Of a stretch of DNA of 64,000 bases, positions 28,383 through 62,800 are shown piece by piece (the first letter of the stretch is position 1; every line of letters starts with the position of its first letter). The notes beneath the pieces are model-generated. The model made no database searches and was not told the DNA's origin. It worked only from the letters and a program-made list of their open reading frames with translations. Made by a program: the position numbers and the translations under genes. The stretch lies in the NCBI GenBank assembly GCA_964187785.1, contig OZ076413.1, positions 70,308,001-70,372,000 on the forward strand, written 5' to 3'. This DNA comes from Amphiscolops sp. MND2022 (Eukaryota).

Positions 28383-28424
<42 letters not shown>

Positions 28425-30479: not shown

Positions 30480-33400
30480 ATGCAGATTCTGGATTTCAGC
30501 AGCAACAATGTTTCCAAACTCATTTGAAATCCCTCCGTGGGTCAAACGGAGAGCCCTAGCTTGCCACGGCGCTCGCTGGCTAATGGGTTTGACGATCTTG
30601 AAACTAGCGAAAGCTACTTCAATCCTTCTCGTTTCCTCCGAATTTATTAACTTACATTACTACTGTTTCCATTGGAAAAGGTCTTGAAAAACTGCGAGAA
30701 AAACAGCTAGACTACATAAACCAGAAGTTTCTCTAGCCAACGAAAATGATCAAACAGTAGAAACCATTCCTGAACCAACCTCGAGCCCCCAACTAGAACT
30801 AACTAGAATTTCGCGCTCCAAAAGAATTGTATTTTTGCTTTTAGCCTAAATGTTGTCACACGTTCAGCCAGCAAACTTCGTTCGCTCAGCGCCATCTTGA
30901 GAAATTTCAGCTCATCAACTTACTCAGTAGGAAAACTGAAAATCCACCTATTTGATAATTCAAAAACTTTTGCACGAAAATCTCGAAATTCATCTCAAAA
31001 TTCAATCAAACAGTTCTCGCCTTTAAGTCAGCGGCATATCATCCTACAGAAGTCTCAATTTACCAATCGGAAGGGAAAGTTCCAAGGCCGTACAGACTTG
31101 CAAAGCTCACAGATCCAAAAATTTACCAAAGAATCATAACACGCAAGAAGCTTCAAATACTTCTAAATCGCCAAATCACAAGCAAAAACAGCCAAATTTA
31201 CTTTTTACTTTGTACAGACTACCGAAGGACCCCAGCAAGAGGGTCAAAATGGTTTTGACCAAAAAGATCTTACATGCAAACCTGTAACGTATTCCAACAT
31301 TTCAAAAATTACTGCAGATGACGCCTTTCCCGAAGTGATGGACTTCCAACCTCCTACCACCAGCAAACATACCAGGAACCCTACAAACGAGCTACTTGAG
31401 GCTCAATACGGAAATACCAGTGCTGAAAAAACGACAACATTGGAACAAAACTGTCCCAGGAAAAAGCTCGGGTGAGAACTATATATTACATAGTTGAACC
31501 AAGGTTCAGGCTCTGTTGCTATTGACACTATTCAACGTATTAGGGTCCTGTGTACCGCACCATCTTTCGAGGGACGTTTTGTTCCTCCTGCAGAACCCAA
31601 TCGTATTCATGAGGTGAGAGAAGCTGCTGTCTCAAAAGAATGCATTGAATCATCATGTGGAAATAACAACAAAGTGAAGAACAAACATCGGCCGAAAATT
31701 TTAATGCCTACTAACTCAGGAGTTCCTCAATTCGAACTGTAAAAGAGGTGGTAAACAAGAGTACTTTTTTAAAACTCGGGATGCTTCGTGAACAAGAAAC
31801 TAGTAATACTGAAACGAGCAACCCAGCAGCAACTTTCTGCGAAAAAGTGAAAGGAAACTTGCGTACTTCCTTTCGAAGAAAAAATATAATCCGCATGAAG
31901 GTTATTCCACCTTTCAGGAAAGAACACTTTCAGTACCCTCAACTTCATAAAGAAATGGAAGATGCTATAAATGAAAGTGCAACCATCTTTTAACCAAAAC
32001 ACAGATGATTACAATCTCCAAATACTAATATCCTCCAACAAGAAGGTAGAAGGCTACAAATCCTGATGGTAACAGCTCCGGGGAGGCTAAAAAGATGTCG
32101 AACGAGCAAAACTCAATGGCAATAAAATGATGGGGGAAAATTGTTTTCCAACAGGCACACAGGTTTGAGATTTTCTCCTGGAGAATACCCAAGAAAGCCA
32201 TGATACACATTACCAATCTACCAATCCTCTGTGAAAAAGATGAGCTAGAAAAATGCTCGATCTTCCGAACCACACATAAGATATACTGCGAAGAGAATCC
32301 GTTCAAACTGAGTCAGGAAAAAGCTATACAGGACGTGCAAGACTTCCAATTACAATCAACTCAAACGAACGCGAGGAACACCTTCTGGAATGGTCAAACT
32401 GGAGAAACCCCGAATCAAGTCTAATAATCTGGAATGAAATCTGGAATCTGGAATGTCGATACCAAAACTACACAAATGCAGAGAATGTGACAATGAAGGA
32501 AGATCATACATCGGCCACGATGAGAAATGGTGCCGAATCAAACAACCTCGGCAAACTCCAATTGCTAATCATCAGGACCCAGAACTCAAACAGTCCCACA
32601 CCGTGCAAGAAGACCCTGCCCAGCAACATAGAGGTACACGTCGCAATGAACACGGAAAACTTGATATCTGAGGAAGAGGTAAAAGATGTCAGTGAAGATG
32701 AAAACCAACGTCTGCCTCAGATGATGATGTGGACACGGAATCCAATCCGGACGGAAATGCAGGTGAGTCAATGCGACTTCAGCAAAAAAGGAAAAAGAGA
32801 TCAAAGACAAGCAATGATTCAATGTCGAGTTCAACAAACCAACCGAAGAAGAAACCTTTGAACGCAGTCTCCAATGGCTAGTCTCTCCTTTTCGAAGTCT
32901 CTAGATGACAGATGGTGTAGGATCATTCGAAAAGTCAAAACGCCTCCAACGGAGCCACAAAGCAATCCTGAGCAACCAAACCCTCAACCACATTCCGTCC
33001 CATTGATACGGCTGAAGCAGTGGTTGAAACAGAAAATAACATTGATATCTCAGTAGAAGATATGAATGTCCGAGAAGAGCACAGAGAAATCATGGAAGGG
33101 GATATTCAAACTTCCTCAGAAGATGATGTATCTCCAGAAAGACCAGAAGCAGAAGTAGAACAAACAAATGAAAGACACCCAATCGCAGGAAACAACCAGC
33201 AAGAAAAAGAAGAAATTAAACACAAGCAAAGATTCTGTTTCGAGCTCCATGAATCAACCGATGAAGAAACCTTTGAACTACAATGGCTAGTCTTACCTTT
33301 TTTGAATCTCTACTTTTTTCTCTCAATGTAAGAGGTCTCAATAATCCTAATCGACTTATTGAGGTATGCAACATAACTAAAAATCATAGTAATAGCGACA

Positions 33401-35330
33401 ATAAGAACAAACATCAAGCGAAGCTTGTGATACCCCTCATCTCAACAATGTCAGAGGCCAAACAAGTAAAGTGAAGGTAAGTAAACACCAGTTCTCGAAC
33501 TCCTGATCAAGAAACTAATAATACTGAAATGACTGAATCTTCTCATGTAAACATCGCATACCCTTTACCTCTTTCAGCGACAAAGTGAAAACACCAGGAA
33601 CTCGCCCAAGGCCTGCTTTTGGTATTCTGAGGATGAAGGTCATCCCTCAATTCAGAAAAGAACTGTTGGAAAAGGATGTAAACGATGCCTATTGTGAAAT
33701 CTGAGAAAAATTCCAGCCAAAGTACTGACATCAGGTTACTGAAGGAGGTCGTCAGCTACAAATTCTAATGGTTACTGCGCCTTTAGCAGCAGATGTAGCA
33801 AATGCAAAATTGACTGAAATAACCATTATGGGAAAAACGGTTTTTCGCACTGGAGATGAATTCTGGCGATTTACCCCATCAGACATCCCTAAAAACATGG
33901 GTTCTTCTCTCCGACGTCCCCGTTTTGCTCCGGGGTGAAGAACTAGTGGACATTATAGAACTACCAATTGACACCGAAATAAACGGAACGATCATGAGAG
34001 AATCAAGAGTTTATGAAACACTCGGACGGGTCCATACAGGGCGTGTCTGCATCCCCATCATTATACAGGATGAAAAGCATGAAGAGGCACAGCGAAAATG
34101 GTCATACTGGAGAAATGACGATGGTCGATTGGAGTGGAACCTTATTCCAATCAACCTTTCCATTCCAAGATAGCATTCTTTTAAAATGAGTTAAGAAAAA
34201 AAATCAATATATTGGACATGACGACCGATGGTGTAAGATTGTGCGAAAGGTCGAAACGCCTCCAGCAGAGTCACAAACCAACCCTGAACTACCCAAACCA
34301 CCACCACCACCCCTCTCATTGTCTTAAACGATAGATGCAGAGGATGAAAGAAGAAAACTTTGAAAACGATATGGAAGCCCAAGAACTAAACGAGAATATG
34401 GACAAAGATATTCAAACTTCCTCCGAAGATGATGCATCCCCAGAAGGACCAGAAGTCGAAGCAGATCACACCAACGAGAATGAAACCCAATGGCGAGAAA
34501 CAACCAACAAAAAAAGAGAAGAAATTAAACACGAGCAAAGATTCTGTATCAAGCTCCAGGATTCGAGCAATAAAAAAACCCTTAAACTCTAACTACAATG
34601 GCTACTCTTTCTTTTTCAGAATCTTTTGACTTCCTTTCACTGAACGTAAGAGGTCTCAATAACCCTAATCGACTTATTGAGGTATGCAACATAACTAAAA
34701 ATCATAGTAAAAGCAAAAAGAGAATATTAGCTCCCCTAGAAACTAAAATAGCTTAACTGAAGGAGGAACAGAGAAAGGATCTTTAAAAAAGGATCTTTTT
34801 CGTACGAGATAGTACCCCCTCAAAGCCCGCGAACCAAACAAAAAAACTTTACATCAAATATTCGTAATCCGACAGAAGCTCTAACTCATCAGAATACTAG
34901 CAGCAACAGTCAAAACTACCGTTTGCAACGCACAAACTGTCTCAGGATCCCAGCAAAAGTGTCAAAGTGGTTAGTTTCGACCAACACGAATTCACATACA
35001 AATTTTCCCCAAAAGTTACAATAACGTATTCCGGCAACCTATTACCAAACAACGCACAATCCACACCGATGCATTGCCCGCAAACTCTTCTACTTGTAAT
35101 AGCTCAAAGTACGACCCAATTGACGACTCTGGACGAAAAACCATATCAATCGACCCACCTCCATTGCAAACATTCCGGAGCTTATTGCTCGTGATGCACA
35201 AACCCAAACCGTGACTAATTAAAACGATCATAGTACACCACAACACGCAAACAGCTCTGGAACAAACAATCATAAACACATAGCCAGAAACCCGCCAGCC
35301 AAAATGTATGCCCAAGAAATCATAAATGTT
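30480..35330 (+). mobile_element. Cluster of decayed L1/Tx1-type LINE 5' portions (ORF1 plus ORF2 stubs), at least 3 copies
   Basis: ORF1-like segments (KVIPPFRKE; CRECDNEG...GHDEKWC knuckle; TWVLLSDVP...HTGRVCIP). APE endonuclease starts SLNVRGLNN follow ATGs at 33283 and 34598. Confidence 0.7.
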
Positions 35331-36565: not shown

Positions 36566-36669
36566 GTAAGCACCAAAAAGAACAGCGAGGGAGATGGGAG
36601 ACAACAACAACAACGAAGACATGCATAAAGCCAGCCAACCAAGTGAAGTGTGGTGTTTTGGATTGAGAG

Positions 36670-36813
36670 TCATTTGGAAAAAGTGAAGATTCCTGCAGCA
36701 TAGCTCACTGAGCTGTCGTTCGTGTTGGCCACTGAACTGGACTGCGAGTAGTGAACAAACTCCAGCTTCACACTCGTGCCATTCAAGTGTCTCGCTTTCA
36801 GCTCCTCTGCCGC
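36670..36813 (-). CDS. MEMO1: MEMO1 last coding exon
   Basis: AAEELK...LEFVHYSQSSSVANTNDSSVSYAAGIFTFSK* matches the MEMO1 C-terminal DSSVSYAAG. Acceptor TTTCAG, phase 0. Confidence 0.95.
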   Translation of the reverse strand, partial: AAEELKARHLNGTSVKLEFVHYSQSSSVANTNDSSVSYAAGIFTFSK

Positions 36814-38546
36814 CTGAAACAGATATTCAAAGTTCCAAAGACTTATACAAAATGCATCTTTTCGAATCGTATCGAGAGTTTGAGAAAATCGAAAAAAGTC
36901 GAAAAATGGCTGTTTTTTGGCCATTTTTAAGCTAACTTTGGCTATGTTTCTCACATCCCAGTCATACGATTTTGATGCCTTTGCGCACGCAAGGGCCCCT
37001 TTGGGTGTAGAATGACTTTGTTAAATTTTATAAAAATCGCATGGACAGAAAGATTTTTGACAAATTTTTGAGAAAGTTGACATTTTCATTGAAAGGTCGG
37101 GAGAAAATAAAAAAAGACTTGAATTCAAACCAGAAACCTTCAATTTACTTTTATTTCCAATGTGACAGTTTAGAATTGAGAAACAAGGTTTGTTCACACT
37201 ATTTTTGTTTATGAAGTCACGCATTCTTGATGAAGAAATCAACAGCTTCCTGTATTCAGTCACAAATAAAAATAAGGTTAATTTGAATATAATCACAGTC
37301 AAAAAACTTCAAAAAGGTCAAGCATCAACATTTCAGAGTTTATTCTGAGTCAGAAATGTATTTCTTTTAGGGCTCCCACCAAAAATTCAGGAGACTTCTA
37401 GATACAAAAGCCCGTTTAATAGAAGCCTCAAAACAATCAAATAGAAAATGATTCAAAATTTTTTCATGATTCCCGTTCCTATTTTACTGAAACAGTAAGG
37501 CCACGAGAGAAAAAGCTAAGTCAGTTCATGAAAAGGAAAAGAGTGGAAGAGTGTGTACTAACAGCGATGAGTATAAAAATCAATACAAGGTGTAAGCTGT
37601 GTTGGGCATTGGTTTGGTTACCACAGACGGAAGCACCCTTAATAATGGTGTTTGCTGACTCTTTTCCGCCACCTACTTTACGTTCCTCGCTCCAATTAAA
37701 TAACCAAGAGTTTTTCTATCCAAAACCGTGCATTGACTAATTGCTTCTTTGGGAAACTAACATTTTGAAGACAGAAATGTAACAAAAATAACAACGTATT
37801 TCGATTTCAATTACATGAATTACATGCCATTACCAGTAAACTATTTTTTGTTTGAACACCTTTAACCCCAATCGACATGGGCGTTTTTTAAAATTTTCGA
37901 AAAATTTGCCAAAAAAATTTCACTCATCAATATCTCCACAACTACGCGTACCAGAGGAATGAACTATAGCGCGTTTGAAAGGTCTGATATTGGGCTTTCA
38001 TTTTGGTCAGGTGAGCCCCTGTCGCCGCGCGCCCCCTCCTTCAGAATTTTAGTCTCTTTTTCCGGTACCGCCGCTTCAGTACTTCGTGCGGCCTGCTGCG
38101 ATAGGGGTTTGTTGCACCAGGACTTGTCGTGGAAGGGTATGTGGTTGGTTTTTTCTATTGATCAAAGACTTTTGAGAAAACTGGATTTCGTCAAAATCTG
38201 AAAATCTGAATTTTGACGAAATATAACTTTTTTTTGTGCAAAAAACCCATTTTTCTCAGCTTTGGAGATATATTCCCTTTTTCTAATGCTTGTGCCATTC
38301 AAATCAATCTAGATACCAATTACTTGTTGAAAAAAAACTGTGCTAGAGAAAATGGGCTACTGGCAAAAGGAATCAGAATTTGGAAAAAAAGGTAGGCTGC
38401 TTTAAAGCATCACTAGGTTCATTGGGGTTAATTAGATTTAGTTAGAGGCAACGAAATCAGCTCGAAAACTAGCGAGGCGCTTTTCTCTGCACACGAAATG
38501 AAATTTATTTTTTTTTGCATCCCTGAGAGGAAGAGTGTGTACTAAC

Positions 38547-41125: not shown

Positions 41126-44100
41126 TCGCGCTCTAAAAATTTTATCTTTGCTTTTAGCCTAAATGTTGTGATAAACTTATTAAAGTTCTTTTAATTAAGT
41201 TTGCTTTTGCATCATTCGACTAAGCATCTCATAGCTCCGTGCTATCATTCAAATCAAACAATTGTTCAAACCCGTCGTGAAGCACCTAAGAAGCCAATCT
41301 TTCCTACGGGGTCGCTGGCTAAGGTTTGATCTGCTGTAGATAATTTTCCAACCGGCTCGTGTGTGGTCGCGTTAGTGGATCAAGCTGAGAAACCGAGACA
41401 GGTGCTTCCAAGCGTATTCGTGAGGTTGCGCTGAAGCTCTCTTGGCGGTCGGCTGACAGGAACCCTCAAAACCGTTTTACCCAAGATACTTTTACGTTGA
41501 TCCTCGTTTACCAATTTTACTGAAACAATGCCGTGAAAAACTGCATGACAAAAGCAACAAGAATACAAATTATTTGCCAGACAGTGCGATAGAGAACGAC
41601 AACGAAAATACAACGGAAAATCCTCAAGAAAAAATAAGCCGCCAGCCAGAAGAAACTAGAAAAACCTTTGCCTTTACCCTAATGATTTTACCCGAGGCGA
41701 AACGCGGCCAAAATTTAAAATCAATGTTTTTTCTGAGCTGTTTTAGCTCAAAAAGTGCAAATTAATCGCGGATTGACTGTTCTTTGCTCCTCTAAACCTT
41801 CTTACTTTAACTTTACGGGAACTTTTACTAAAATTTGCCATTACAATGAAACAAACAGCGTTTATGAAAACACCGAACTCGCAACAAAACTTCCCAAAAT
41901 ACTCACCAACTGTAACGTTCGAAGACAAAGGATCCAAAAATGAGAAAAACAATGGGACCAAACCAAACAATTGCATCAGAATTTCTCAACAACGAAACTT
42001 TGAGAGCCTCATACTCCACCAATTTACCTTTAAATGTCTCAATTTACCAACCCAACTGGCCCCACAAGCCTTGTTGATAGCCAAGGAACCAATATACCTA
42101 TGGAAGAAAATTACATGCAGAATTACAATGAAGAAATTACGATAACGCATTCCGGCAACCCACCACAAAACAATAATGCATCAATTTACACCAATGCAAA
42201 GTCAGCTCAATTTTTGACGACAAGCAGCTCAAACTACAACTAAGGGGCGACCTTGGATCAAAAATCAACTCAAACAACCCACCCAATGTGGAGAACGAGC
42301 AAAAAAAGGAGAAAACACACTCCAAGAAAGTCAGGTAGAAAGATATCGAACCATCCGACCTCATGGATGAAACCCACCATCTCACGACAGTCAAAAGACT
42401 GCGAAAACCTCGGATAATTCTCTACTAAATATTCGAAAAAATCAACCTCAAAACTTCTTTGAAAATTCATCGGTTACAACAGGAGAAATTTCAAATTCTT
42501 CGCCAAAATCTACCCAAAAATTCTCGCCTTACAAATCGGCGGCAGGCCACCCAAACGAAGCGTCAATCTACTCTTCAGATGGCAAATTCCAAGGCCCCCC
42601 TCAAAGCCCGAAAAATTCAAAAAAAAACGCAAAAAAACTTTACATCAAAAATTTATCAACTCTCAAGAAGCTGTAGAAGCTACTAAATCACCAAATTATC
42701 AACAACAACAGCCACAATTACCATTTATAACTCATCGACTGCCGCAGGACCCTAGCAAAAGAGTCAAAATGGCCAATGTAGACCAAGAAAATTTTACATG
42801 CATTTCTGACCCAAAAATTACGATAACGTATTCCGGCACTTCTGAAAACAACTTTATTTTACCAGTACTGAAAGATGCAGGTGAATTACAACAACAACCA
42901 CTTAACAACACCTCTCTCAACACTCCGGGTTCGACGGTGCAGCCACAAGGTCGGCAATTAACTCATGCTAGCAGTTAGAAGAAATGAAAAGCTGGTCACC
43001 AAAGTCGTTCTTTAAAAAAAAACTCGTGAAGAACCAAGCAACAAGGGTATGCTCCGAATACCATGAATTGCAGCTTTTGAGAAGAATGGCACCATCTTCA
43101 AAGGTCACGACGACGCCTGGTGTGTGAAGAAAGCCGAAACTGAAAATTAAAACAGGTCAAAGAGCCAAAAGACAAGCCCAACGAAAACCGATGAAAACGT
43201 GTTTACCAATGACGAACTGAGTGAACATATCTGAAAAACTACGCAACGAAAGTTACTCGTCCAGAACGAGCAGGAGCAGCAAATGAAGACTTGCTCGAAT
43301 TCGTACAAACTCAACCTAGCCGCAGAGCTAGCACAAACCGAAAGACGAGCCAAACCTCAAAACCGAATAAACCTGACGCGAAAAACAGAAACGAAACAAG
43401 GTCAAAACAAAATGCAAACGTCAATGAAGAATCGAGGGCAAGAAGCGATTGTATCAGCAATCGCAACATAGAAACATCAATAGAACGCCATGTAAACCCC
43501 TTAACATTAGCGACTTCATAGATTCAGCATACATGGAACCGAATACCGACACCGACAAAACTGCCAACATGGAACAAGATGGCAGTCAACGTAAATAGTT
43601 TCAATGCTAGGGGCCTTGTAAACCCTTTGAAGCTGACAAGTCGAAACAGCAAGGCAGACATAAGAAATGACGTCATCGCAATTCAAAAAACTACAAAAGC
43701 TCAAGGAGAAACATCTCACAGTAATTGAATATCACGAAGTGAAATACGAGATGCAACCATTTGATAAAACAACCAAATCGGACGCACTGCTACTTTTCAA
43801 TCGAGATAGCAGCATTGAACTGATAAAGCAAACGAAAACATTTCAAATAGTGAAGATCACAACTCAGGCAGCTGAATCGAAAATCTGTATATTTGAAACC
43901 AAGTTTGAACAACAAAACGAAACTAAAGGACCTGAGCTCATCTTCAGAAACGGAGTCGATAAGACAGAATGGACAATCGGTGACATGAACTGCTTTTTTG
44001 ACGTCTAGAAAAAGAAACCGCTAAGTTCAAAGCTGTGACACAAGTTTTTGATATGGGATTGAGCGATATGGCAGTGTAACTTGAGAACACACACTTTGCG

Positions 44101-44605
44101 CCACACCAAAAACCATCGCGCCTCGATTACAGTTTTTTCAATAGTCAGCCAAAAACAACGATCTAGACTTGCTTTTCTGATCACCGCATTCTAAGCCTGA
44201 CAACCAAGCAAAACGCCGAGCTAGGTCGAAGATCTTTCGAAGGGATGACGCTACAGCTGATGAAAATGTCAAAACACTACTCATGCTGATCTCAAACAGA
44301 TGACTCGACTGGTGAACAACTAGCGAATGGTGCGTATCTTAGAATGAAGAATGAAATCGCAAAACTTTCTAAGGCAAGCAAGCATATGGAAAGCAAGGCA
44401 GAATAAAAATGAACTGCTCAAGGAGCACGATGAAGAGGCGGAGCAAAATCTTGCAAAGTACTCGCAGCAGTGAAGGTCAAACGCATTGATCAGAATGAAG
44501 GAAAATTGAAGCTAGTCAAAAGGTACTGCTCAGATAATGCCAACTCTCATAGTAACGTGATCAAGAAGCTGAAAAACAGACTACTTCCGAAAAGTGGCGA
44601 TCTGA
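41126..44605 (+). mobile_element. Decayed L1/Tx1-type LINE (leader, ORF1, endonuclease part of ORF2)
   Basis: Leader motif at 41157. ORF1-like segments. Endonuclease motifs SFNARGL (~43600), IGDMNC (~43975) and RLDYSFF (~44120). No RT. Confidence 0.7.
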
Positions 44606-47560
44606 CTTTTAGCCTAAATGTTGTGATAAACTTATTAAAGTTCTTTTAATAAGTTTGCTTTTGCATCATTCGACAAAGCAACCATAGCTCCGTGCTATCA
44701 TTCAAATCAAACAATTGTTCAAACCCGTCGCGTTAGTGGATCAAGCTGAAAAACCGAGAATGGTGCTTCATAGCGTATTCGTGAGGTTGCGCTGAAGCTT
44801 CCTTGGCGGTCGGCTGACAGGAACCCTCAAAACCGTTTTACCCAAGATACTTTTACGTTGAACCTCGTTTACCAATTTTACTGAAACAATGCCGGAAAAA
44901 ACTGCATGACAAAAGCAACAAGAATACAAACTCTTTCTCAGAGAGTGCGATAGAGAACGAAAATACAACGGAAAATCCTCAAGAAAAATAAGCCGCCAGC
45001 CAGAAGAAACTGGAAAACCGAGCAGATGAACTTCAGCAGAGCTATTACCAACAATGCCTACGAGTTCAAACACATCGACGTTCAGCAAGTGCCGAAAATG
45101 AAAATTATACCCCCACTGACAAAGGAACTTTTTACCGATGGCGCAGCTCTAGAAAGGGCAATGATAACAGCATACACGGACATCCTCAGCGTTTTTCACC
45201 ATATCACGAACGAGTATGAAACTAGGAGAGAAGTTACAGTTCTTACTGGTAATCGCCCCAATAGAAGCAGATGTTGCACGCATTAAACTAAACGGACTTA
45301 AACTAATGAATCGAACGGTGTTCCCGACAGCAGAAAACTCCTGGATGGTTTGGACATCTGCGTTTCCAAAGATACATGACATCAGGATAAACAACTTGCC
45401 AGCACTGCGACGATAATCAGTTATTGGAACTACTGCAGGTCCCTGACTTTGCAGAGCTAGGGGAAGTTAAACGGGAACGACAGAGAACGGAACTAGGCGC
45501 GTTTTACATCGGAAAAGCAAAAATAACGGTAAAGATTAACCACGAAGAACAAGAACGCTTGGAACTTTCGTCAAAGTCACGCGCTTACTCAGACATAGCT
45601 TACTGCTGTGAACTCCCTACTTACGCCAGCATCCCTGCTGATCCATTGAGCAACGCAAACCTAAAATACCTCTTCCCTCTGGTGTTTGTATTGGCCATCA
45701 CAAAAGACTTTCAAGACCCGAGTGGAATAAAGTCTTTGTGCAACGAAGAAAAAAGCCAAGTTGCGAAATCTAAACAGGGCAAAAAACTGAAAGCACTCAA
45801 AATCTGCCGAAGTCATGCCAAAGACAAGATGAAATGATAGCAGGAGAAGTAAAAAGCAACCAGAGAACAGCGTGGCCAATCCTCCAGTTTACCTTGCCGT
45901 GTAAATTCGAAATGCGTTATTCCCCCCGTACATGAAGATATCAAAGAACAGTCGAACCTACCGAAGGGCATTGAGGCAAACAACGACCGCTGCTTCAAAA
46001 CGCAATACAAGAATGAACACCTGAAAGTGTATGACAGCAGTGCAACCATTACAGCAACAGTCAGGTCAGCAGAAGAAATGGAACAACTGAGAACTTGGTC
46101 AAAGAAGGCCTTCTTCGACGAAAAGCTGGTCAGAACCCAAGTCATTCAAGCATGCATACCAAGCATCATGGCTTGCACCTATTGCCAAGCCCAAGCAGGG
46201 CTTTACAAGGGTCAGGACGAAAGCTGGTGTGTGAAGAAACCAGTTGCAGAAAAAGAAACCTGAAACGACCCCCAAAGTGTGAGCGCCAAAGCAAAACAAA
46301 CTGAGAAGTCGAGACTGGTGTTCCTCAGCGTATTCTCGAGGTTGTGCTGAAACTTTCTTGGCAGTTGGCTGATGGAAGCCCTCAAAAAACTACCAACCGC
46401 AAGAGCAGAGCTCGACCACAGCTCGCAGTGGTAGAACTAATTTACTTCGTTATTTCAAACCTAACTAATTCAAAGATGAACGCAGTAGCAACGAAAACAG
46501 AAGAAAGCGAAGAATACCTCCCCTATTTTATTCATTCTTCCTGTTAGGGAAGACGATTAATAAACCCAACGGCATAAATGATATCTTCATGAATTTGTGC
46601 ACGGAAATCTTGGAGCTCCGCAAATACCATCTGCAAACCGTGCTCTAGCTGTAATCCAGAAAGTCACCTACGGGTACAAGCGTCTGAAAGCTGTAAAATT
46701 GAAGATGCCAACTTTATGTCAAAATCAACCAGACTCAACCAGACGAGATGTTAGCAATTGGTATTGAATGCGGCCACAAGAATGTTTGGCCAGATCGTGA
46801 TGACAGCCGATGAAATAACGAACTGAATCCGCCTGAAGGCATTGAAGCAAACAACGACTTGACCTTCAAAACAGTAGGTATCGGCCCGGTACCGTCACCA
46901 CTTCGGCAAAAATAAACTCAGCCGAACAACTAGAGAACATGAAAAACGAGACGACCGAACCTACAGATTCTACCCTTGCAATGTCAGCATCAAAATTCAA
47001 AATGCTTTGCCCAAACTGACCAACGACGAAATCAAAAACGAACCAAAACTCTCCGAAGGCATCACCGCCAACGACGACTTGAACGTCAAAACAGTCAGCA
47101 TCGGGCCGTACTTGAAAGTCTTTGATGGAACAGCGACAATCTCAGCCACTGTTCAATCTGCTGAGCAAATGGAACAAATGAAAAACTGGTCGCGCAAATA
47201 TCTTTGAAGAAAAACAAGTTAGAAACCAAGTCACGCAGATGTTTGCTCCAAGCATCAAGACATGCACTTCCTGCAAAAAGAAAGGTTTTGCCACAGAGGT
47301 CTTGATGATACTTGCTGTATTAAGAAAAACAAGGATGAACGTGAACTGGAAGCGAACTCGCGGGAAAGAAACGGTCACGAATGAAGGCGAAGTCTTTACA
47401 GACGAAGATGAATGTTTGCATAACAAACAAATCTCAAAAATTAGAAATGACAGTTGCACATCACCGGTGAGTAGAAAGAACAAGAGATTGACTTAGCTAA
47501 CGATGTTTGATAACCGGGAGGAACTAACATCAAAACATGAAAAGCGCTCATGTAAGCATT
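44606..47560 (+). mobile_element. Two further related LINE 5'/ORF1 copies (second starts ~46300)
   Basis: 5' region is nearly identical to 41157-41270 and 41370-41660. ORF1 motifs KIIPPLTKE, LQVPDFAELGEV, YIGKAKITV and CTYC/CTSC knuckles. The 5' UTR recurs at ~46300. Confidence 0.7.
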
Positions 47561-49400: not shown

Positions 49401-49538
49401 TTTTCGATAATTGAATTTTCATAAAATTGAGTTTTTTGCAACAGTTCACCGCAAAACACACGATGTTTTTTTCCGAAGAGCAAGGTTTGCTAGTAATAAT
49501 GATAATGAACGTATAGTATGAGTGCTGATGTGGCGTAC

Positions 49539-49793: not shown

Positions 49794-50529
49794 CTGCAAC
49801 AACACAACAAAGGTCTCCTTCTTCACTTCTCAGAAAGGAGTCATCAACATTATTATTCAACAAACCAGAGCCGCATGTGCGGTAAAGGAGTCGGAAACGT
49901 AGTAAAATGTTGACAAATTACATACTTTTGAAATCGTATGGAGTTTTTGACAAAATCCCTTTTTTGGTCATTTTTGGACTCGGATCGCAGTCGTACGATT
50001 TTGATGTCATTGCACACATAGGACTCTAATATGGAGTAGAAAGACTGTAGAAAATTTCGCTCGAATCGTAGGGACAGTTTTTGTGAAAATCGAAAAAAAT
50101 ACAAATTTGATATTATCCTCAGCAAAGTAGATTTGAAATATTTTTCAGCAGTTTTTTCCGACAAAAGAACGCATGTAAATGTAAGTTAGTCTCGACAGTT
50201 GTCAGACTGCACCGAAAAAATCGAAACATTCAATACTGACCTTTGTCAAAATTTCCGCTTAATTCAAAATATAAGATATTTGGGGGCATTTCGATATTCG
50301 GAGGCAATGGAACGTTGTATGTTTTTCCATTGCATAGAATCTGGCGCCATGAAGAACATCGCCAATGACAAATATGATTTCAAAAAATCAATGACCATAT
50401 ATTGGTTGTTTAAATCTGACTGATCTGTTGAATAGTTTTGTGAGAATGATCTTCAAACACGGCGTCTCGTGTTTACCGCTTTGACCGAATAGCTGCTGTG
50501 CGTAAACTTCTGGTAGCCAGACTACTGTA

Positions 50530-50910: not shown

Positions 50911-50912
50911 TA

Positions 50913-55860: not shown

Positions 55861-57700
55861 TTCGCATTAAACCAAAGGGACTTGAACTAATGAACAGGAC
55901 CGTACTCACGACAGCTGAAGAGACCTTGATGCTTAGGAAATCTGCCTTCCCTAAGGTACACGACATAAAAAATAACAACCTGCCGACAACAAGGTAATGG
56001 AATTATTGCAGATCCCAGACTTTGCGGAGCTAGGTGAAATCCAACGAGAACAACAGAGGACGGAACTTGGTACGTTCTACACTGGAAAGGCCAAAATGTC
56101 GGTGAAAATCAACAATGAAGAGGAACCAGAACGCTTGGAAATCACGGGCTTACTGAGACATAGTTTACTGGTGTGAACTCCTCATTTACGCCAGCATACC
56201 TGCTCTGCATCTATGCAAAAAATGTAGACTTGAGAAGCGGCAAAGAAGGAGGACACCACAAAGACTGGTTCAGACTCAACAGACAACCTGAACCAGCTGT
56301 AAAACCTCTCGTTGACCAGCCAGCTGAAGAAAAAAAACCGAGACAATTTGGAAACACTGGGGAAGAGAAAAAATTGCTATCAGACTCTAGCTGTGTAAGG
56401 GGTTTCTTGCACTGATCAGCTATTGTGGTTGACCAAGCAAGAAACCCTGAAAAACCGAGAGCATTGTCCCCCAATCTGGCCTGAGGACCAAGTTGAAGCA
56501 TCCTTGCCGGGTGGCAGATAGCAGGCCACAGAAAGATACCAGTCTTAACGACGTTTCCTTGATCGTGGAGAGTTTTGGAACGATCGTATCTCTATGAACT
56601 CGTCCAACTTTTTCTCCCCCTTTCGAGGCTCTTGAAACTAGCGAAAGCAACTACAACCCTCCCTATTTTTCCGTGTTACCTAAGTTACCTTCACTTCAAC
56701 CTCGTTTACCGATTACACAGGAAAAAAGCCGGAGAACTGCCATACAGAAACAAGACTATAAAAATTCTTCCACACTTTTTGCTAACTAAATCAATTGAAA
56801 AAGCAATAAAAACCTTCAGTAACAAACCATACGCTGCCAGCCAGAACAAACTAGAACCAGAAAAGAAACCACGCAAAAGATGAATTTCGACAGAGCCGTG
56901 ACCAAAAAGTTACGAATTCAAAGATCGATGTCAGGCAAGTGCTAAAACTTGAAATTTGAACTCCGCTGTGGAAAGAACTCTTTAACGATGGCGCTTCTCT
57001 GTAAAACGAAACGACAAAGGCGGACAGACATCCTCAGTGTCTTTCATCCGCAGATCAGGGGAATGATAGCTGAGTCGAGAACGAATAAGAAAACTCGGAG
57101 AAAAGATTACGAGCATTACTTGTAATCGCCTGTCGAAGCTTAAGTTGTGGCTCGATCAGACTGGATGGACTGAAAAAAATGAACAGGATCGTGTTCCGCA
57201 CCGCTGAAAATACTTGGATCGTGAAAACGTCGGCCTTCCGAAAAGTACACATCAGATCAAACAACCTGCCAGAAAATTGCGGCGACAACCTACTAATGGA
57301 ACTGATACAGACCTGACTTCGCGGAGCTTGGTGAAGTACAACGGGGACAGCGGACTGATCTCGGCACATTTTATACTGGAAAGGCAGGACGAGAACGTTC
57401 GGGAAATTGGTCGCAATCATGACCTTTCCCAGATATAGCATACTGGTGTGAAACTCCTGCACTCCCTGCGGATGAAGGAAAAGGGAAAAAATTGCCAACA
57501 ATGGAAGATGAAGACTCAATTTTCACCCAATTTGCGACCAACCCTAACAATATCTACGTCTTTCACAGTGGTCGGAGAGCGTAAAATGCACTCAATTAAT
57601 ACAGTAGCAGCCTCAAATGCAAAACAGATTCTTCGATAAAATTCAAACAAAGAAAGATCTTGTCCTACTCCGCATAATGGGACCACAACTAAAGAGACAG
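55860..57700 (+). mobile_element. Two decayed LINE ORF1 pieces
   Basis: GLELMNRTV...SAFPKVHDI...QIPDFAELGEI...FYTGKAK at ~55880 and again at ~57170-57380, similar to 45300-45540. Confidence 0.65.
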
Positions 57701-58283
57701 CAAAAATTTCAGGTGTCTGTTTCAAAATAGGAAATTCTCAGATTGATATGTCTTCAGTGGCTATGTTGAAAACATCGGTTCTACAACAAATACAGCACGT
57801 ACAAAACTCCAGCTAAAAACATTGAAACTTTGTAATGAAAAACTCAAAAAATTAGGCACAAAACTGCACGCAAACATCAGTTAGAACCATTAGTCAACAA
57901 CTTTCTTGATTCCATTTGGTTGGGCCGCAAACACAACCTGAAAAAATTGTAGCTTCAAAAACCTTGTTCTGCAATGTTAACAAAGTAATTGTAGCGTCCA
58001 AGCTTTTTGACTTGAAACTTTTCTGAGCGAAGATTCGACAGGGTCCTTTTTTGCACAGTACCGTAAACCTTACTTCGTTGCACCGAAATTTAACGAATCT
58101 TGAAAAAACCTTCCATTGTAGGCTTAATATTCAACAGAATAGCCAACTAAACATGCAGTGACGAAAAATTTGACAGCATTGCGCACGAAGTAAATCTACA
58201 ATTTTCTTTCGGACTCCGACAACTGAAGCTTTTCACAGGATTACGAAAATTTCTTCCAAAATGAAACTTTCGGCCTAATTATT

Positions 58284-61200
58284 GTGGATTTGTGTTCTAT
58301 AAATTGTAGGGGATTCAAGGATTCTAGTCGTTTAAACCAAATCATTTCTCAGTGCTGTGGGTCCAACCTAAAACTTCAGAATTTGATTTTCCATATTCAA
58401 GAAACAAAACTTGAAAAACTGACAAGTCACGTGAAAATTTTGGAAAAATATCACCTGAAATATCATTTAGTTCCAGCTGAAAACATGTCAGGGGGACTTT
58501 TCTCAGTTTTCCCTTAGTTTTTTCACAAAAAACGTGAGGAAGTCAACGTGTATGATTTTTATTGAATTTGAAAACTTTGATGGGCTTTTTGCTAATGTCT
58601 ACATTAAACCATCACATTACAGATTACGACAGTTCGAATCGGATATCAGAGAACTGTTCAGAGAAATTGAACAACGAAACTCAGAATTTTCTTAAAATCC
58701 GGTGATCTAAATGCTTTGCCAGCCGAAAGTTGTTCATCAAATCCTGTTATTATGCCTAATGACTTTCGTCTTTTGCGATATAGAAAAAGTGTAAGAATCA
58801 TGGGACCACTCAACCTTGATCATGTTACTTCCGCATCAAATCTTGACTTTTTCACACACTTTGATAAAACATCTGGCACTTTTAGTCAAATTGATCATAT
58901 ATTTACTACTGAATCCAATTGCAATTTCTTAACCTAAAAGTTAGCTTTCTCTGAGCACCGGCTAATTATTTTGACTTGGTCAGAGGAAACTTTTTTCCGG
59001 TCAAGTTATTGGAAATTTAATGACAATGTTTTGCACCAGCACACCTTCGTTCAATCTATAATACGTGAAAAATTTCAGCAAGCCAATTCCAACATTGGGA
59101 CTGAACTTCATAATAATGATTACCTAAAAAATATTATACGTGAAAAGCTAAGATCAGTTTGTATTCTATATGCTCACAAAGAAAAGTTTGAAGAGAAGTT
59201 AATTTCAAGAAATCGAACAAACTGAAATTCGTTTAGCCCGATCCGGATCGGACGGAATACTTTTGAAACAGTCTCATCTCACAAGTCAATTATCCAAAAT
59301 TCAAGGAAACGAATCGAAGAAAGATGTAAACAAATGAACTTTTCCACAGATTTTCACAACGGTGATTCCCATTCTGTGAAAAACTACCTTAACAGAAAAA
59401 AAGAGAAAACGAGAATTCAAGCAATCAAAATTAATGCATGTGATGGAACTTGTGATGAAGACCGAATAAAGCAAGAATTTGTTGATCATTTTACAGAACG
59501 TTTTTTGAAGCCTTATATAATTGGCGACCAGAAACAGTCTAAAATCGTAAAAACAACAAGTTATATCTGACTTTCGCTCGAAAAAGTCTGGACAAATCAA
59601 TGAAATTCGAGACCTGTGTTTCACAAGGGGAGAAATATCGGAAACTGAGGTGACTAGCCATTAAGCGATTAAATCCGGACAGTCTCCCAGGCTTAGATGG
59701 GCTTACTTCTATTTTTTACAAAGCGCATTCCGATTTCTTCGTACCTACTTGTGCAGTATTTATATTCAAGCTTTTTCCGAGAAGGGTTCCTGTGTCAGTT
59801 CAAAAATGCTGTCGTGAAGTTCATTCCAAAAAAAAACAAAACAGAAAAGGTAGGGGATTTTCGTCTCATAAGTTTGATGAACACTGATCAAAAAATACTA
59901 TCGCATAATCTCACTGCAAGAATAATCACTCCATTTTCCAAAAAAAACTCATTTCTCACCAAACTGCATACTTGCCTAATCGAAGCATTCATTCATCACT
60001 CATCAAAGTGAATGTAAATCTAGAGAACTTCCGAAGCACTGACTGTTTAGTTGCAGTTGATTTTGGTGAAGCATTTGATAGAATTGATAGAGACTTCCTT
60101 TTCTCCTTATTGAAGCTATTGGCATTGATGAACGCACATTGAATTTGATAAAAATCATCTATGAATCCACTGTAGCTTTCTTAGACATAGATGGTTTTCT
60201 TTCTCTTTCGATAAGTATGAAAAATGTAGTACGCCAGGGATGCCCTTTGTCAGCACTCTTGTTCGACCTGGGAATTGAACGACTTTTGTTGTTCATTAGT
60301 GAATCCCAAGGGGTCTAATCAGATTCGATGTTCAAAGTAATTTATATGCAGACGCTTTAACCTGCTGTATCAAAAAAGAATCGTTTGATGCGTTGATGAC
60401 GACTCTAAACTCTTTCCTTGAAGTTACAAATCTGACGCTTAATCATAAAACTGAAATTTCATGTCAGGAGAAATGCTCAATGAGGTCGCAAAAGTTGAAA
60501 CAGCGAAAAGTTAAATTCAAGACTGGTAACTTCAAGTTAGAAATGATTTCAAGGCTGACAGGGGCAAATAAGTCTCGCATGTATTGCAACAAGGGCTAAA
60601 AATATGGAAACATTTGTTATGCAGAAACTAATTCATCAAGTAGGACATAAAACAGCTCTTAAGAATCAAATGGAACGAATTGATAACATCTTTGTTGACG
60701 CAATATGGCTCGGGCGCAAACACAAATTGAAAAAAAGTATTTTACAAAAACCTTGGTCTGTAATGGGTTTTGCTTTCAAAAATTTCACAAGTTGTTGCTT
60801 CAAAAATTTTCGATTCCAAAAATTTTTCAGCTGAAGAAAACAATAGGACGACAATCGAGTTATATCGTAAAACATTGTTTCGGAATTTAACTTCTTTGAT
60901 AAGAACATTTCACTGCAACTTGAGAATTAATGACCGAAGCGAAGTCGAATTACATAAGGAAAATAATATTCTCATCCTCAACACACAGATGAGAACAAAA
61001 GAAATTCATAAATTTCTTTATGCTTCAGAAAACACTGAACCATATCAGAGAAACACTAAAATTGCATCGAAAATCAATTACTCACCCGAACAAATTTTTA
61101 CGTTCATTCGCAGACTGTGGAAACAGGAAAAATATGCAGCTTTGAAGAACTATTTGTATCAAATTTTCATGAATTATCTTGAAAAAAAAACAAAAAACTG

Positions 61201-61429
61201 GAACTCGGATGGGTTCTTGATTGCATCTGTTGTTACTGTGGTACGGAAGAAGAGTCACGGTCACCTTTTGTTTGAATGTCCAAGCGTTACCAATCTAAAC
61301 TTTTTTAACGTGGCAGCCTATCTCCCTGGACTTTCTTACACCTCTGGGGATATTTACCCTTTTAAACGCTCAATTGCTCTTCTTCTTTCATCTTGGAGCT
61401 CAGATAAAGCAAAGTTCACACACGATTGA
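58284..61429 (+). pseudogene. L1/Tx1-clade ORF2 (APE endonuclease + RT), many frameshifts
   Basis: SINCRGF, IQETK, SYWKFN, PGLDGL (~59685), FIPKK...FRLISLMNTDQKI, VDFGEAFDRI, RQGCPLS (~60232), YAD (~60345) and a C-terminal HLLFECP. Confidence 0.92.
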
Positions 61430-61651
61430 GTTAGCCTAAGGAACCCTTTTCTACCTAATCACTAAACGAACCAAGTTGCTACCGCTGATATGTAACTAAG
61501 CAATGAACACCAAACCATCGAAAACCATTTAGTATGGCTGTAATTCAATGCGAATACTGAGTTATTCATACCGATATGTCAAACTTGCCATTAATCTCAT
61601 TTACTGGATGTACTTGTATTTTTGTGGTATTTCTTAATGAATTCTCTGAAA

Positions 61652-62800
61652 GCCTAATTGTTGTGATAACCGTGAACAGTTGACTTCTGACTTTCACGAA
61701 AAAGTGCAATTGTCAACTGAAACACCAAATTAAGTACAAAATTATGCTCAAATTCTCAAAGAAAATTCAGCTAGTTTACGTGTTTGCGCCACGATTATCG
61801 TTCGTTTCGTGTTACCAATTCCAAAAGAAAATATTACATAATGGCAAATTACTTGACAAGCTATTCATAGAATCCATGCTAACAAACTGAAAATATTTCC
61901 CAAACAGCAATTTTTAAATGTGCAATCCAACGAAAAAGGGAAACTTGAAAGCAAATACTGTAATCACTTCATTATTGCAAAATGAAGCGAGAGACATATT
62001 AACTAAGGTATTACAATGAATGGCAGAGTAATTCTTCCATACTCCATTCATGACTCGTCGAAAAAAGATGCTGACTACACAAAAAATGAGAATTTCCTTT
62101 GGGAAAATACCTCATTGCATATCAAAAGAAACATCCTTGCGGAGATTACATCCTGCGGAATAGAAGCTTCCAGTATAGAAGAAATTGTTCATCGACAGAG
62201 ACAGCTTCCAAATGGAAATCTGTTTCACACTGGTCTTGCCAGGGTTTGACCCATTATTGCGAATCAAGACGAGGATTGCAGACTTGAGGAATGGTCTAAA
62301 AATGCCATTCAACAAACATTCTATTGAATGGAGCGACGTTTCAATGTTGTTGCCCTTCCTTCACAGTTGCAAATGACCTGCAAAAAGTCTCTGGTATGCA
62401 TCACGAACAAAACAATTATCAGAAACCCCACAACGAATGCAAGTTACAGAACTTTCATCTGAAGAATACTTTCAATTCAAACACTTGACCACTTTTAATT
62501 CAAACAAAAACGCTATTACCTCACCTCCCAACAACTATCTACTAGCGCCGCTACTTAACTAGCTAACTAGCAAGCTACTATCACCAATGATGTGTTCAAC
62601 AAAGATAGCTGCTTAACATTAACATAACATGAAAGAGTTAGTGACTCCACTACACTACTCTACTCTACTCTAATCATTGATCTGCTTCAATTCAGTGTGA
62701 TATTACTTACATTATTTTCATTCGAAAGATAGTTAGTCACGTCTGAAACGCGTGGGACTTGACCACTATTAATTCAAAAGAAATAGTAATAGTAAACATC
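61652..62800 (+). mobile_element. LINE 5'/ORF1 copy starting at the leader-like motif
   Basis: GCCTAATTGTTGTGATAA at 61652. ORF1 TKGITMNGRVILPY...LFHTGLARV...CCCPS. Confidence 0.6.

What the first reader, a model, noticed from the sequence alone, without database searches (positions are those of the whole stretch)
30811..61669. A spliced-leader-like motif marks the 5' boundary of four LINE copies
Seen: GCCTAAATGTTGTGATAAACTTATTAAAG at 41157-41185 and 44612-44640, GCCTAAATGTTGT at 30844-30856, and GCCTAATTGTTGTGATAA at 61652-61669. Each sits at the start of a + strand LINE ORF1 unit, and the downstream sequences are of at least three types. The 30.8 and 41.1 kb copies also share ~35 nt upstream (TCGCGCTC..AAAA...TTTGCTTTTA). 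From memory, unverified: acoel transcripts carry a leader close to GCCTAATTGTTGTGATAAACTTATTAAA. Known: NeSL and trypanosome CRE/SLACS elements target SL genes, Tx1-clade LINEs are often site-specific, and dinoflagellate retrogenes keep relic SLs. Inference: either L1/Tx1 elements that insert into SL exons, or LINE RNAs that are trans-spliced and reverse-transcribed together with their leader. Either would be a notable link between trans-splicing and L1-type retrotransposition.
Basis: partly seen in the sequence, partly recalled or inferred. Interest (0 to 1): 0.8.

Follow-up and report, generated by a model that had tools for sequence, protein, structure and literature searches.

The report
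LINEs that target spliced-leader genes
The motif is the first 13-28 bases of this acoel worm's own spliced-leader (SL) gene, left at the front of L1-type jumping genes that insert at the start of SL genes; SL-gene targeting was known only from an unrelated LINE group in trypanosomes and nematodes.

Summary
All four motif copies are where stated, and a fifth lies at 58273. The motif is the 5' part of the published 31-nt spliced leader (SL) of Symsagittifera roscoffensis.

In this genome the SL gene sits in about 1,200 SL+5S rRNA tandem units. Roughly 10% of units carry an insertion at one fixed site:
- 5' junction: SL promoter + SL[1-17] (or 1-13, or 1-28) + element.
- 3' junction: a conserved ...TTCTTTAAAA tail + an entire SL gene.
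- So SL[1-17] is a 17-bp target-site duplication, and it also flanks 5'-truncated copies.

The elements are L1-group LINEs (APE endonuclease, reverse transcriptase, zinc domain) and short derivatives that keep only ORF1. All 19 copies of one young family lie inside SL arrays.

The window holds old, broken copies stacked head to tail. A paralogue 9.4 kb downstream lacks one element, which shows insertion into a bare 18-nt SL relic.

Trans-splicing does not explain these copies. It does happen elsewhere: at least 592 dispersed sites carry the complete leader on other LINE families. The scan had already noted that on other windows, but not the SL-gene targeting.

Transcription from the SL promoter is inferred only, because no RNA data could be reached.

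The parts
30811..30843 (+). Remnant of the SL-gene promoter-proximal flank (31-33 nt) in front of copy A
   Evidence: blastn of the 904-bp SL+5S unit against the window: unit -31..+13 matches 30811-30856 at 87%; sequence read
30844..30856 (+). SL[1-13] (T7A variant), 5' junction of element A
   Evidence: The same SL13 junction type is seen for the i4940 family in the array
30857..32560 (+). Element A: decayed 5' UTR plus ORF1 of the i2000/i5972 lineage. The 3' limit is approximate.
   Evidence: blastn to the i2000 5' UTR (86% over 44 nt) and tblastn to i5972 ORF1 residues 44-606. Window 29351-32365 is copied, inverted, 130 kb away at 98.7%, so this junction exists only twice in the genome
40898..41156 (+). 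259 nt of SL-gene upstream flank (78-79% identical to array units)
41157..41184 (+). SL[1-28] (T7A), head and junction of B-family element B1
   Evidence: In the arrays the B-family junction is promoter + SL[1-28] + AAGTCC...
41185..44611 (+). B1: decayed B-family element (5' UTR, rearranged ORF1 pieces)
   Evidence: About 30 copies at 90-91% identity, nearly all inside SL arrays; ORF1 pieces by tblastn
44612..44639 (+). SL[1-28] (T7A) between B1 and B2
44640..45640 (+). B2: second B-family copy in tandem (5' UTR 92% identical to B1, then ORF1 residues 364-573). The 3' limit is not defined.
56383..58272 (+). Element X: decayed, with ORF1-like pieces. In the paralogue its 5' end is preceded by an SL[1-16] relic and the 3' tail of a D copy.
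58273..58286 (+). SL[1-14] (G9A): upstream copy of the target-site duplication made by element E
   Evidence: The empty paralogous site, L042:7085, has a single SL[1-18]
58287..61651 (+). Element E: 5'-truncated i4940-like ORF2 (APE + RT), broken by stops, ending in AATGAATTCTCTGAAA
   Evidence: tblastn to i4940 ORF2 residues 31-1105; 3' tail match; absent from the paralogue
61652..61669 (+). SL[1-18]: downstream copy of E's duplication and head of element D
61670..62470 (+). Element D: ORF1-only family, 83% identical to a copy inside the C1 SL array
63407..64000 (+). Further D-family fragments. The stack and its roughly 3-kb tandem duplicates continue beyond the window.

Best explanation
The motif is the 5' end of the animal's SL exon. 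In the window it marks the 5' junctions of non-LTR retrotransposons that integrate specifically at the transcription start of SL RNA genes. These are L1-group LINEs (ORF1, then an ORF2 with APE endonuclease, reverse transcriptase and a C-terminal zinc domain) and short relatives that keep only an ORF1.

Shown:
- The element's 3' end (conserved ...ATTCTTTAAAA) is joined exactly to SL +1.
- The 5' end is joined after SL position 17 (sometimes 13-14 or 28).
- So SL[1-17] stands on both sides as a 17-bp target-site duplication. The upstream copy stays with the SL promoter. The downstream copy begins an intact but promoter-less SL gene.
- The duplication is also present on 5'-truncated copies, so it comes from the target and is not only a head carried by the element.
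- A second, rarer site gives a 17-bp duplication of SL-gene positions 30-46.
- New insertions can enter a bare SL[1-18] relic, which produces head-to-tail stacks with an SL fragment before each element. The window is such a stack: old, broken and further scrambled by tandem and inverted duplications.

Inferred:
- The endonuclease nicks the bottom strand between -1 and +1, primes reverse transcription there, and the top strand is cut 17 nt downstream.
- Full-length elements are transcribed from the captured SL promoter, so their RNA starts with SL[1-17/28].
- That head helps form precise 5' junctions by homology.
- When a full-length copy lands off target, the head creates a new target in front of it.
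For: Identity of the motif:
- The SL sequence is published.
- The canonical gene ends ...AAATAG|GTAAGT, has an Sm-like site, a stem-loop around the donor, and a 5S rRNA gene in each 904-bp unit.

Junctions in the array:
- In 50 kb of the C1 array, 13 inserts from at least six families all show promoter+SL17 (or SL13) at the 5' side and tail+whole SL gene at the 3' side.
- There are tandem double inserts separated by SL17.
- A 65-nt 5'-truncated copy is flanked by SL17 on both sides.

Window evidence:
- Element E is absent from the paralogue L042, where a single SL[1-18] stands.
- In L042, a D tail + SL16 + X shows that the stack continues.

Genome census:
- 1141 promoter+SL[1-22], 1238 promoter+SL[1-17], and 127 tail+SL junctions.
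- All 19 copies of the i4940 5' region lie in SL-array regions.
- 29 of 32 B-family matches lie in arrays; the other three are at this locus.
- B copies placed at gene position 46 bring their own SL[1-28].

Proteins:
- ORF2 has Exo_endo_phos + RVT_1 + zf-RVT.
- Its best solved relative is human L1 ORF2p, E 1e-56.
- Foldseek ranks L1 and Tx1 far above jockey, R1, R2 and SLACS.
- The roughly 400-aa ORFs of the short elements are ORF1 homologues.
- The short element i1621 shares its last 43 nt with the autonomous i5972.
Against: - No RNA data could be reached. Transcription from the SL promoter and the order of the nicks are inferred.
- The window has no SL intron, Sm site or 5S remnant.
- Memo-like exons lie on the opposite strand among the copies. 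It is therefore unclear whether the locus began as stray SL genes or as off-target copies.
- Much of the array copy number comes from 35-36-kb array duplications rather than separate insertions (coordinates), so the census overstates the number of events.
- The absence of E in the paralogue could in principle be a deletion between the two short SL repeats.
Confidence: 0.88

Rival explanations
1. The window copies are retrocopies of LINE RNAs that were SL trans-spliced, so the leader was reverse-transcribed with the element.
For: - This does occur in the genome. Dispersed loci have unrelated upstream flanks, then the complete 31-nt SL, then a LINE.
- One family has two alternative SL junctions. 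The second lies right after an internal TTTTCAG acceptor.
- 592 exact complete-SL sites are followed by a base other than G.
- The B-family head could be read as a full SL with one substitution (T29A).
Against: - The window copies carry only 13, 14, 18 or 28 of the 31 nt, always the 5' part. Trans-splicing adds the whole exon.
- Copies A and B keep SL-promoter DNA upstream.
- The same families in the arrays sit between a promoter and a whole SL gene.
- E's SL fragment is a duplication of a pre-existing relic.
Confidence: 0.04
2. The targeting mechanism is the same, but the origin of the window locus differs. The copies are off-target insertions of RNAs that began at or upstream of SL +1 in an array, carrying an SL head and some promoter flank. 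Later elements then homed to those heads. On this reading the locus was never a set of local SL genes.
For: - No SL intron or 5S remainder is present anywhere in the window.
- Memo-like exons lie on the minus strand at 36.7 and 49.3-49.9 kb.
- An array B copy carries about 12 promoter-like nt before its own SL head.
- E homed to a bare SL[1-18].
Against: - A, B and C share the T7A variant that the arrays lack, which points to one local ancestral SL copy.
- 259 nt of flank would need a start site far upstream, and none is known.
- The young families show no off-target copies.
Confidence: 0.3
3. The motif is merely a conserved LINE 5' UTR box, or an assembly artefact, unrelated to SL genes.
For: None beyond the fact that it always lies at element 5' ends.
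Against: - It is identical to the published SL.
- It is contiguous with SL promoter flank.
- Unrelated element families share it.
- The same junctions recur on several chromosomes and contigs.
Confidence: 0.01

Closest known systems
SLACS / CRE1 / CRE2 / CZAR (trypanosomatids) and NeSL-1 (nematodes): SL-exon-specific non-LTR retrotransposons
   Same: - They insert at one fixed position in the SL exon of tandem SL RNA genes.
- They occupy a fraction of the units.
- The 5' junction keeps the SL promoter and the first bases of the leader.
- The literature treats this as a 'safe haven' strategy (PMC4640811).
   Different: - Those elements carry a restriction-like (PD-(D/E)xK) endonuclease and belong to the early-branching CRE/NeSL groups.
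- The elements here have an N-terminal APE endonuclease and an L1-like ORF2.
- SLACS matches only weakly, and through the RT alone.
- The host is an acoel, and the site is the transcription start (-1/+1) with a 17-bp duplication.
Tx1-clade target-specific LINEs (Tx1, Keno on U2 snRNA genes, others on U5, 5S rRNA genes, microsatellites and DNA transposons)
   Same: - APE-type L1-group LINEs with a fixed insertion site in multicopy small-RNA genes.
- Precise 3' junctions and tandem insertions that sandwich a duplication.
- Non-autonomous partners that share the target (PMC4494074).
   Different: - In the papers I could read, the SL gene is not among the reported Tx1 targets (PMC4494074 and PMC4640811 list U2, U5, 5S, satellites, microsatellites and transposons).
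- Membership of the Tx1 clade, as opposed to L1 proper, is untested here: 21% identity to Tx1 against 17-19% to mammalian L1.
R1 / R2 in rDNA
   Same: - Occupation of roughly a tenth of a tandem gene array.
- Dependence on transcription of the target unit (inferred here).
- 5' junctions helped by target sequence carried on the RNA.
- A fixed duplication length (R1: 14 bp).
   Different: - The clades differ: R1 and R2 score far lower.
- The target differs.
- No ribozyme was looked for or seen.
HAL1 ('half-L1') ORF1-only elements of mammals
   Same: Short elements that keep only an ORF1, have the ends of a LINE, and presumably borrow ORF2p in trans. i1621 shares 43 terminal nt with i5972.
   Different: - There are four divergent ORF1-only lineages, all with open frames of about 390-410 aa.
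- All are site-specific for the SL gene.
Relic spliced leaders on dinoflagellate retrogenes
   Same: The dispersed complete-SL LINE copies elsewhere in this genome are DNA copies of trans-spliced RNA.
   Different: - That is not what the window copies are.
- Here the tagged RNAs are LINEs themselves, in an animal.

Membership tests
Target-specific non-LTR retrotransposon of SL RNA genes (functional class) | Independent copies and families inserted at the same nucleotide of the SL gene | tested here: met
   At least six families all have their 3' end at SL +1 and their 5' junction after SL 17 (or 13, or 28)
Target-specific non-LTR retrotransposon of SL RNA genes (functional class) | Target sequence restored or duplicated at the 3' junction | tested here: met
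   A whole SL gene follows every insert. The 17-bp duplication is also present on 5'-truncated copies
Target-specific non-LTR retrotransposon of SL RNA genes (functional class) | Genomic distribution confined to the target arrays | tested here: met
   i4940 family: 19 of 19 in array regions. B family: 29 of 32 in arrays, the rest at this locus
Target-specific non-LTR retrotransposon of SL RNA genes (functional class) | The element-encoded endonuclease cleaves the target site | not testable with these tools
   Needs a nicking assay with the APE domain on SL-gene DNA
L1 group (L1 + Tx1 clades) | ORF2 with N-terminal APE endonuclease, RT and C-terminal Cys/His domain, preceded by an ORF1 | tested here: met
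   Pfam Exo_endo_phos, RVT_1 and zf-RVT; human L1 ORF2p at E 1e-56; near-invariant C1024, C1027, H1036, C1041
Tx1 clade | RT-domain phylogeny places the element inside Tx1 rather than L1 | tested here: inconclusive
   No labelled reference set was available. Foldseek: Tx1 at 21% identity, E 1e-47, against mammalian L1 at 17-19%, E 1e-48 to 1e-49
CRE / NeSL (SLACS, CRE1/2, CZAR, NeSL-1) | Restriction-like PD-(D/E)xK endonuclease downstream of the RT and no APE domain | tested here: not met
   An APE domain is present at the N-terminus. SLACS aligns only over the RT, E 1e-14
Retrocopy of an SL trans-spliced RNA | Complete leader up to the splice donor, joined to the body at an acceptor, with an unrelated upstream flank | tested here: not met
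   Window copies have 13, 14, 18 or 28 of 31 nt, and A and B have promoter flank. The feature is met by other families at L005-L015 and L055/L056
ORF1-only (HAL1-like) non-autonomous LINE derivative | Encodes ORF1 but no ORF2, and shares termini with an autonomous partner | tested here: met
   The 1.4-2.0-kb elements have one 388-406-aa ORF homologous to LINE ORF1. The i1621 and i5972 tails are identical over 43 nt

The most novel reading that the evidence does not exclude
The two ways in which LINEs of this genome carry the leader may be steps of one evolutionary path. In this reading, a LINE first acquires an SL head, by trans-splicing or by starting at a captured SL promoter. It then uses that head as homology for precise integration into SL genes. 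Because a bare SL[1-18] is a sufficient target, every full-length copy creates a new landing site in front of itself. The family can therefore build self-seeding stacks outside the SL arrays, as at this locus. The B family would be the intermediate: it has an inherited 28-31-nt SL head followed by a complement of the leader that mimics SL stem-loop I.
Probability: 0.2. Interest if true: 0.8.

Novelty: new variant of a known kind. Interest (0 to 1): 0.62.

Why it matters
- SL genes have now been taken as a niche by LINEs at least three times: trypanosomatid CRE/SLACS, nematode NeSL, and here. This time the element is an APE-type, L1-group LINE rather than one with a restriction-like endonuclease. 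That is a clean case of convergent target choice.
- The site is the transcription start, so each insertion swaps the SL body for the element behind a strong snRNA-type promoter. About a tenth of the SL genes are affected.
- The 17-bp offset, the conserved 3' tail, the ORF1-only partners and the small (18 nt or less) sufficient target make this a tractable system for studying how an L1-type endonuclease and RT gain sequence specificity.
- The same genome also holds hundreds of LINE copies that carry the whole leader through trans-splicing, so both links between trans-splicing and retrotransposition can be studied side by side.
- Practical point: genomic SL copies (about 150 partial and at least 592 complete) can mislead SL-based mapping of trans-splice sites and gene starts in this species.

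Tried and rejected
- Rfam on the window found no SL or 5S family. The window holds no intact small-RNA gene. Rfam does find 5S in the array unit.
- A search for SL intron remnants in the window (AGGTAAGTATTCCAACC, up to 3 mismatches) found none.
- The first alignment of L032 to the window was in the wrong orientation and meaningless. Redone with blastn, it showed an inverted 98.7% duplicate.
The 3' junction of the B family therefore stays undefined.
- RNA evidence: neither i4940 nor the dispersed LINE has an RNA run on record.
- Pfam finds nothing in any of the ORF1 proteins of the SL-targeting families.
- Tx1 versus L1 could not be decided, because there is no labelled reference set.
- Literature searches found no report of APE-type LINEs targeting SL genes, nor of LINEs carrying a leader in animals. 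The library is incomplete and Repbase was not searchable.

Full report
**1. Observation**

- The 29-mer is exact at 41157-41185 and 44612-44640. The 13-mer is exact at 30844-30856. GCCTAATTGTTGTGATAA is at 61652-61669.
- A fifth copy, GCCTAATTATTGTG, lies at 58273-58286.
- A tolerant scan finds five copies, all on the + strand, and one poor minus-strand match at chance level.
- An exact 13-mer is expected about 0.002 times in 64 kb.
- The stretch shared upstream of the 30.8 and 41.1 kb copies is real.

**2. What the motif is**

- The string is printed in the S. roscoffensis genome paper as that species' spliced leader, GCCTAATTGTTGTGATAAACTTATTAAATAGA. That paper reports 30% of genes as trans-spliced (PMC9911081).
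- The window's genome is 1.07 Gb. The window is C5:70,308,001-70,372,000.
- The genome holds 2119 matches to the 29-mer with up to 2 mismatches.
- Most are in tandem arrays, for example C1:16.22-16.67 Mb. The 904-bp unit holds an SL RNA gene and a 5S rRNA gene.
- The SL gene reads exon ...AAATAG|GTAAGT, with the donor in the loop of stem-loop I, a second hairpin and an Sm-like AATTTTTGA.
- So the motif is the organism's SL, or that of a very close relative.

**3.

I read 50 kb of the C1 array (L036-L040) and laid the unit on it.

- Thirteen insertions interrupt the units, always between the end of one unit and the SL start of the next.
- Every 5' junction is promoter + SL[1-17] (GCCTAATTGTTGTGATA), or SL[1-13] for one family, followed by element sequence.
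- Every 3' junction is a tail ending ...TTCTT(T/C)AAAA followed by an entire SL gene.
- SL[1-17] is therefore duplicated.
- The inserts are 1.45, 1.6, 2.0, 2.08, 2.9, 4.94 and 5.97 kb long. They belong to at least six families with unrelated 5' ends and related 3' tails.
- Two inserts are tandem doubles separated by SL17 (i1448+i1448, and D+i1448).
- One insert is a 65-nt 5'-truncated fragment + SL17 + a full element. A truncated copy has no 5' head of its own, so its flanking SL17 must come from the target. The 17-bp target-site duplication is real.
- A 113-bp insert elsewhere in the SL gene has a 17-bp duplication of gene positions 30-46. This is a second site with the same offset.

**4. What the elements are**

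- The 4.94-kb element has an ORF1 (447 aa) and an open ORF2 (1109 aa). ORF2 has Exo_endo_phos (APE), RVT_1 and zf-RVT domains. The 5.97-kb element has the same plan, with a frameshift.
- The best solved relative is human L1 ORF2p, E 1e-56 across the endonuclease and RT. R2 scores 1e-21 or weaker.
- The structure model has mean pLDDT 80. Its Swiss-Prot fold search ranks:
  - mammalian L1 ORF2p: E 1e-48 to 1e-49, 17-19% identity;
  - Xenopus Tx1: E 1e-47, 21% identity;
  - jockey, R1 and R2: far below;
  - SLACS: E 1e-14, RT only.
- So the elements belong to the L1 group. The choice between Tx1 and L1 is open, and they are not related to the known SL-specific CRE/NeSL elements.
- Outside acoels, the nearest proteins are fish and frog L1-like RTs at about 25% identity.
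- The short elements (i1448, i1621, i2000, D) each have one open frame of 388-406 aa. It is homologous to the ORF1 of the long elements and carries a shared C-x2-C-x9-H-x4-C motif. They are ORF1-only derivatives.
- i1621 has the same last 43 nt as the autonomous i5972. This fits mobilisation in trans through recognition of the 3' tail.

**5. Genome-wide picture**

Counts with up to one mismatch:

| Junction | Count |
|---|---|
| promoter + SL[1-22] | 1141 |
| promoter + SL[1-17] | 1238 |
| tail + SL[1-22] | 127 |

- So about 97 units are broken at position 17.
- The tail+SL junctions lie on C1, C2, C12, C13 and small contigs.
- Adding the SL13 family (19 copies) and the B family (about 30) gives about 145 of some 1,260 promoter-bearing units (1238 plus the 19 SL13-type units, which the 27-mer pattern misses), or roughly a tenth, occupied.
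- All 19 copies of the i4940 5' region are 98-100% identical and start at element base 1 to 5. All lie in SL-array regions and none lies elsewhere in 1.07 Gb.
- Caveat: the C1 array has 35-36-kb higher-order duplications (coordinates), so copies are not all separate events.

**6. The B family (window 41185 and 44640)**

- It has about 30 copies at 90-91% identity, in arrays on C12, C13, C1 and unplaced contigs.
- There the junction is promoter + SL[1-28] + AAGTCC....
- In some units a B copy sits after gene position 46 and brings its own SL[1-28]. In one case about 12 promoter-like nt precede it; in another the head lacks its first 3 nt.
- So the SL head is part of the B RNA. This is the best available sign that these elements are transcribed from, or from just upstream of, the SL start of an occupied gene.
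- All array B heads I read share T29A, so the head is inherited rather than added anew each time.

**7. The window itself**

From 30.8 kb to the window's end, all LINE pieces are on the + strand.

- Copy A: 31 nt of promoter flank + SL13 + an i2000/i5972-like 5' UTR and ORF1.
- Copy B1: 259 nt of promoter flank (78-79% identity) + SL28 + a B element.
- Copy B2 follows after another SL28.
- Further on: X, then SL14, then E (a 5'-truncated i4940-like ORF2 whose tail is AATGAATTCTCTGAAA), then SL18, then D.
- A paralogous block 9.4 kb downstream (L034/L042, 86-89% identical) reads X + a single SL[1-18] + D, without E. E therefore inserted into a bare SL relic and duplicated SL[1-14]. No more than about 18 nt of leader, plus perhaps a few A/T-rich bases upstream, is needed as target.
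- In L042, a D tail is followed by SL[1-16] and then X. The locus is thus a head-to-tail stack with an SL fragment before each element, later copied in roughly 3-kb tandem blocks and in a 98.7% inverted duplicate 130 kb away.
- All copies are decayed. No open frame in the stack (30.8 kb onward) exceeds 219 aa, and identity to array copies is 83-90%.

**8. What is not explained**

- The window has no SL intron, Sm site or 5S remnant.
- Memo-like exons lie on the minus strand at 36670-36954 and 49318-49863.
- Either stray SL genes once lay here, or flank-bearing read-through RNAs landed off target and their SL heads then attracted further insertions. The T7A variant shared by A, B1 and B2 favours stray SL genes. 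I put the off-target reading at about 0.3.

**9. The rejected alternative, and where it is true**

- Trans-splicing adds the whole 31-nt exon to an acceptor and gives unrelated upstream flanks. The window copies fail both tests.
- The dispersed matches pass them. L005-L015 have unrelated flanks, the complete leader and LINE ORF1s, with PHD fingers in two of them.
- One family (L055/L056) is a 3,992-bp LINE with ORF1, an RT-bearing ORF2 and a (TC)n tail. The two copies are 99.5% identical and lie at unrelated sites.
- Of 40 matches scored, out of 113 candidates, most begin right after the leader. Seven begin 26 nt further in, just after an internal TCTTTTCAG.
- Five copies have the leader joined exactly there. 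Two junctions in one family, the second at a canonical acceptor, mean repeated trans-splicing followed by retrotransposition.
- There are 592 exact complete-leader sites followed by a base other than G, split evenly between the strands.
- Earlier agents of this scan reported this class on other windows (s1-188554, s1-188567). They did not report SL-gene targeting.

**10. Comparison and novelty**

- SL exons are a known LINE target only for CRE/SLACS/CZAR and NeSL, which carry restriction-like endonucleases.
- APE-type target-specific LINEs are known in the Tx1 and R1 clades. Their targets include U2, U5, 5S, microsatellites and transposons (PMC4640811, PMC4494074).
- An L1-group, APE-type lineage specific for the SL transcription start, with ORF1-only partners, a 17-bp duplication and stacking on SL relics, is a new variant of that known kind.
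- I found no report of it. The library is incomplete and Repbase could not be consulted.

Noticed in passing
L005-L015 (dispersed on C1), L055/L056 = G000:C1:3719400-3726500 and C1:10383300-10390400: Other LINE families (PHD-type or RRM-like ORF1; one complete 3,992-bp element with a (TC)n tail) begin with the complete 31-nt SL at unrelated sites. One family uses two alternative SL junctions, the second right after an internal TTTTCAG. There are 592 exact complete-SL sites genome-wide. These are trans-spliced LINE RNAs copied back into DNA.
   Followed up: yes
L038 (G000:C1:16256664-16256776): A 113-bp insert in the SL intron is flanked by a 17-bp duplication of SL-gene positions 30-46. B-family copies also join at position 46. 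This is a second insertion site in the SL gene with the same 17-bp offset.
   Followed up: partly
window 41170-41200; L054:1480-1515: The B-family 5' end is SL[1-28] followed by a 14-nt near-complement of the leader's 3' half. It forms a hairpin like SL stem-loop I without the splice donor. It resembles the 3' arm of the real stem (14 of 19 by eye).
   Followed up: partly
L051 (G000:C13:13286024-13289302): A head-to-head palindrome: an inverted B head and SL abutting a forward SL gene, and an inverted SL gene abutting a forward B element. It is probably a recombination or hairpin product.
   Followed up: no
G000:C1:16.27-16.35 Mb (coordinates): The SL+5S array contains a higher-order duplication of about 35-36 kb that copies units together with their inserts, so insert counts overstate independent events.
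   Followed up: partly
L054, L045-L053 (C12, C13 and unplaced contigs): A second SL+5S unit type of 1,074 bp, with an extra copy of an internal repeat and a slightly different promoter-proximal sequence.
   Followed up: no
window 49318-49863 (-) and 36670-36954 (-): Two ORFs match Pfam Memo (profile 92-186, E 2e-20; profile 238-268, E 1e-3). These are exons of a Memo-like gene or pseudogene on the strand opposite to the LINE stack, with copies B1 and B2 lying between them.
   Followed up: no
window 1-16000 and 17300-29335: Two long satellite arrays, with periods of about 775 bp and about 930 bp, fill the first 29 kb.
   Followed up: no
window 5467-7575 (-): A 702-aa ORF with DUF1759 and aspartyl protease domains: the gag-protease part of a BEL/Pao-type LTR element. 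Another finding of the scan covers its neighbour.
   Followed up: no
window 29351-32365 and G000:C5:70470218-70473243: An inverted segmental duplicate, 98.7% identical and about 130 kb apart, which includes copy A and its SL13 junction.
   Followed up: partly
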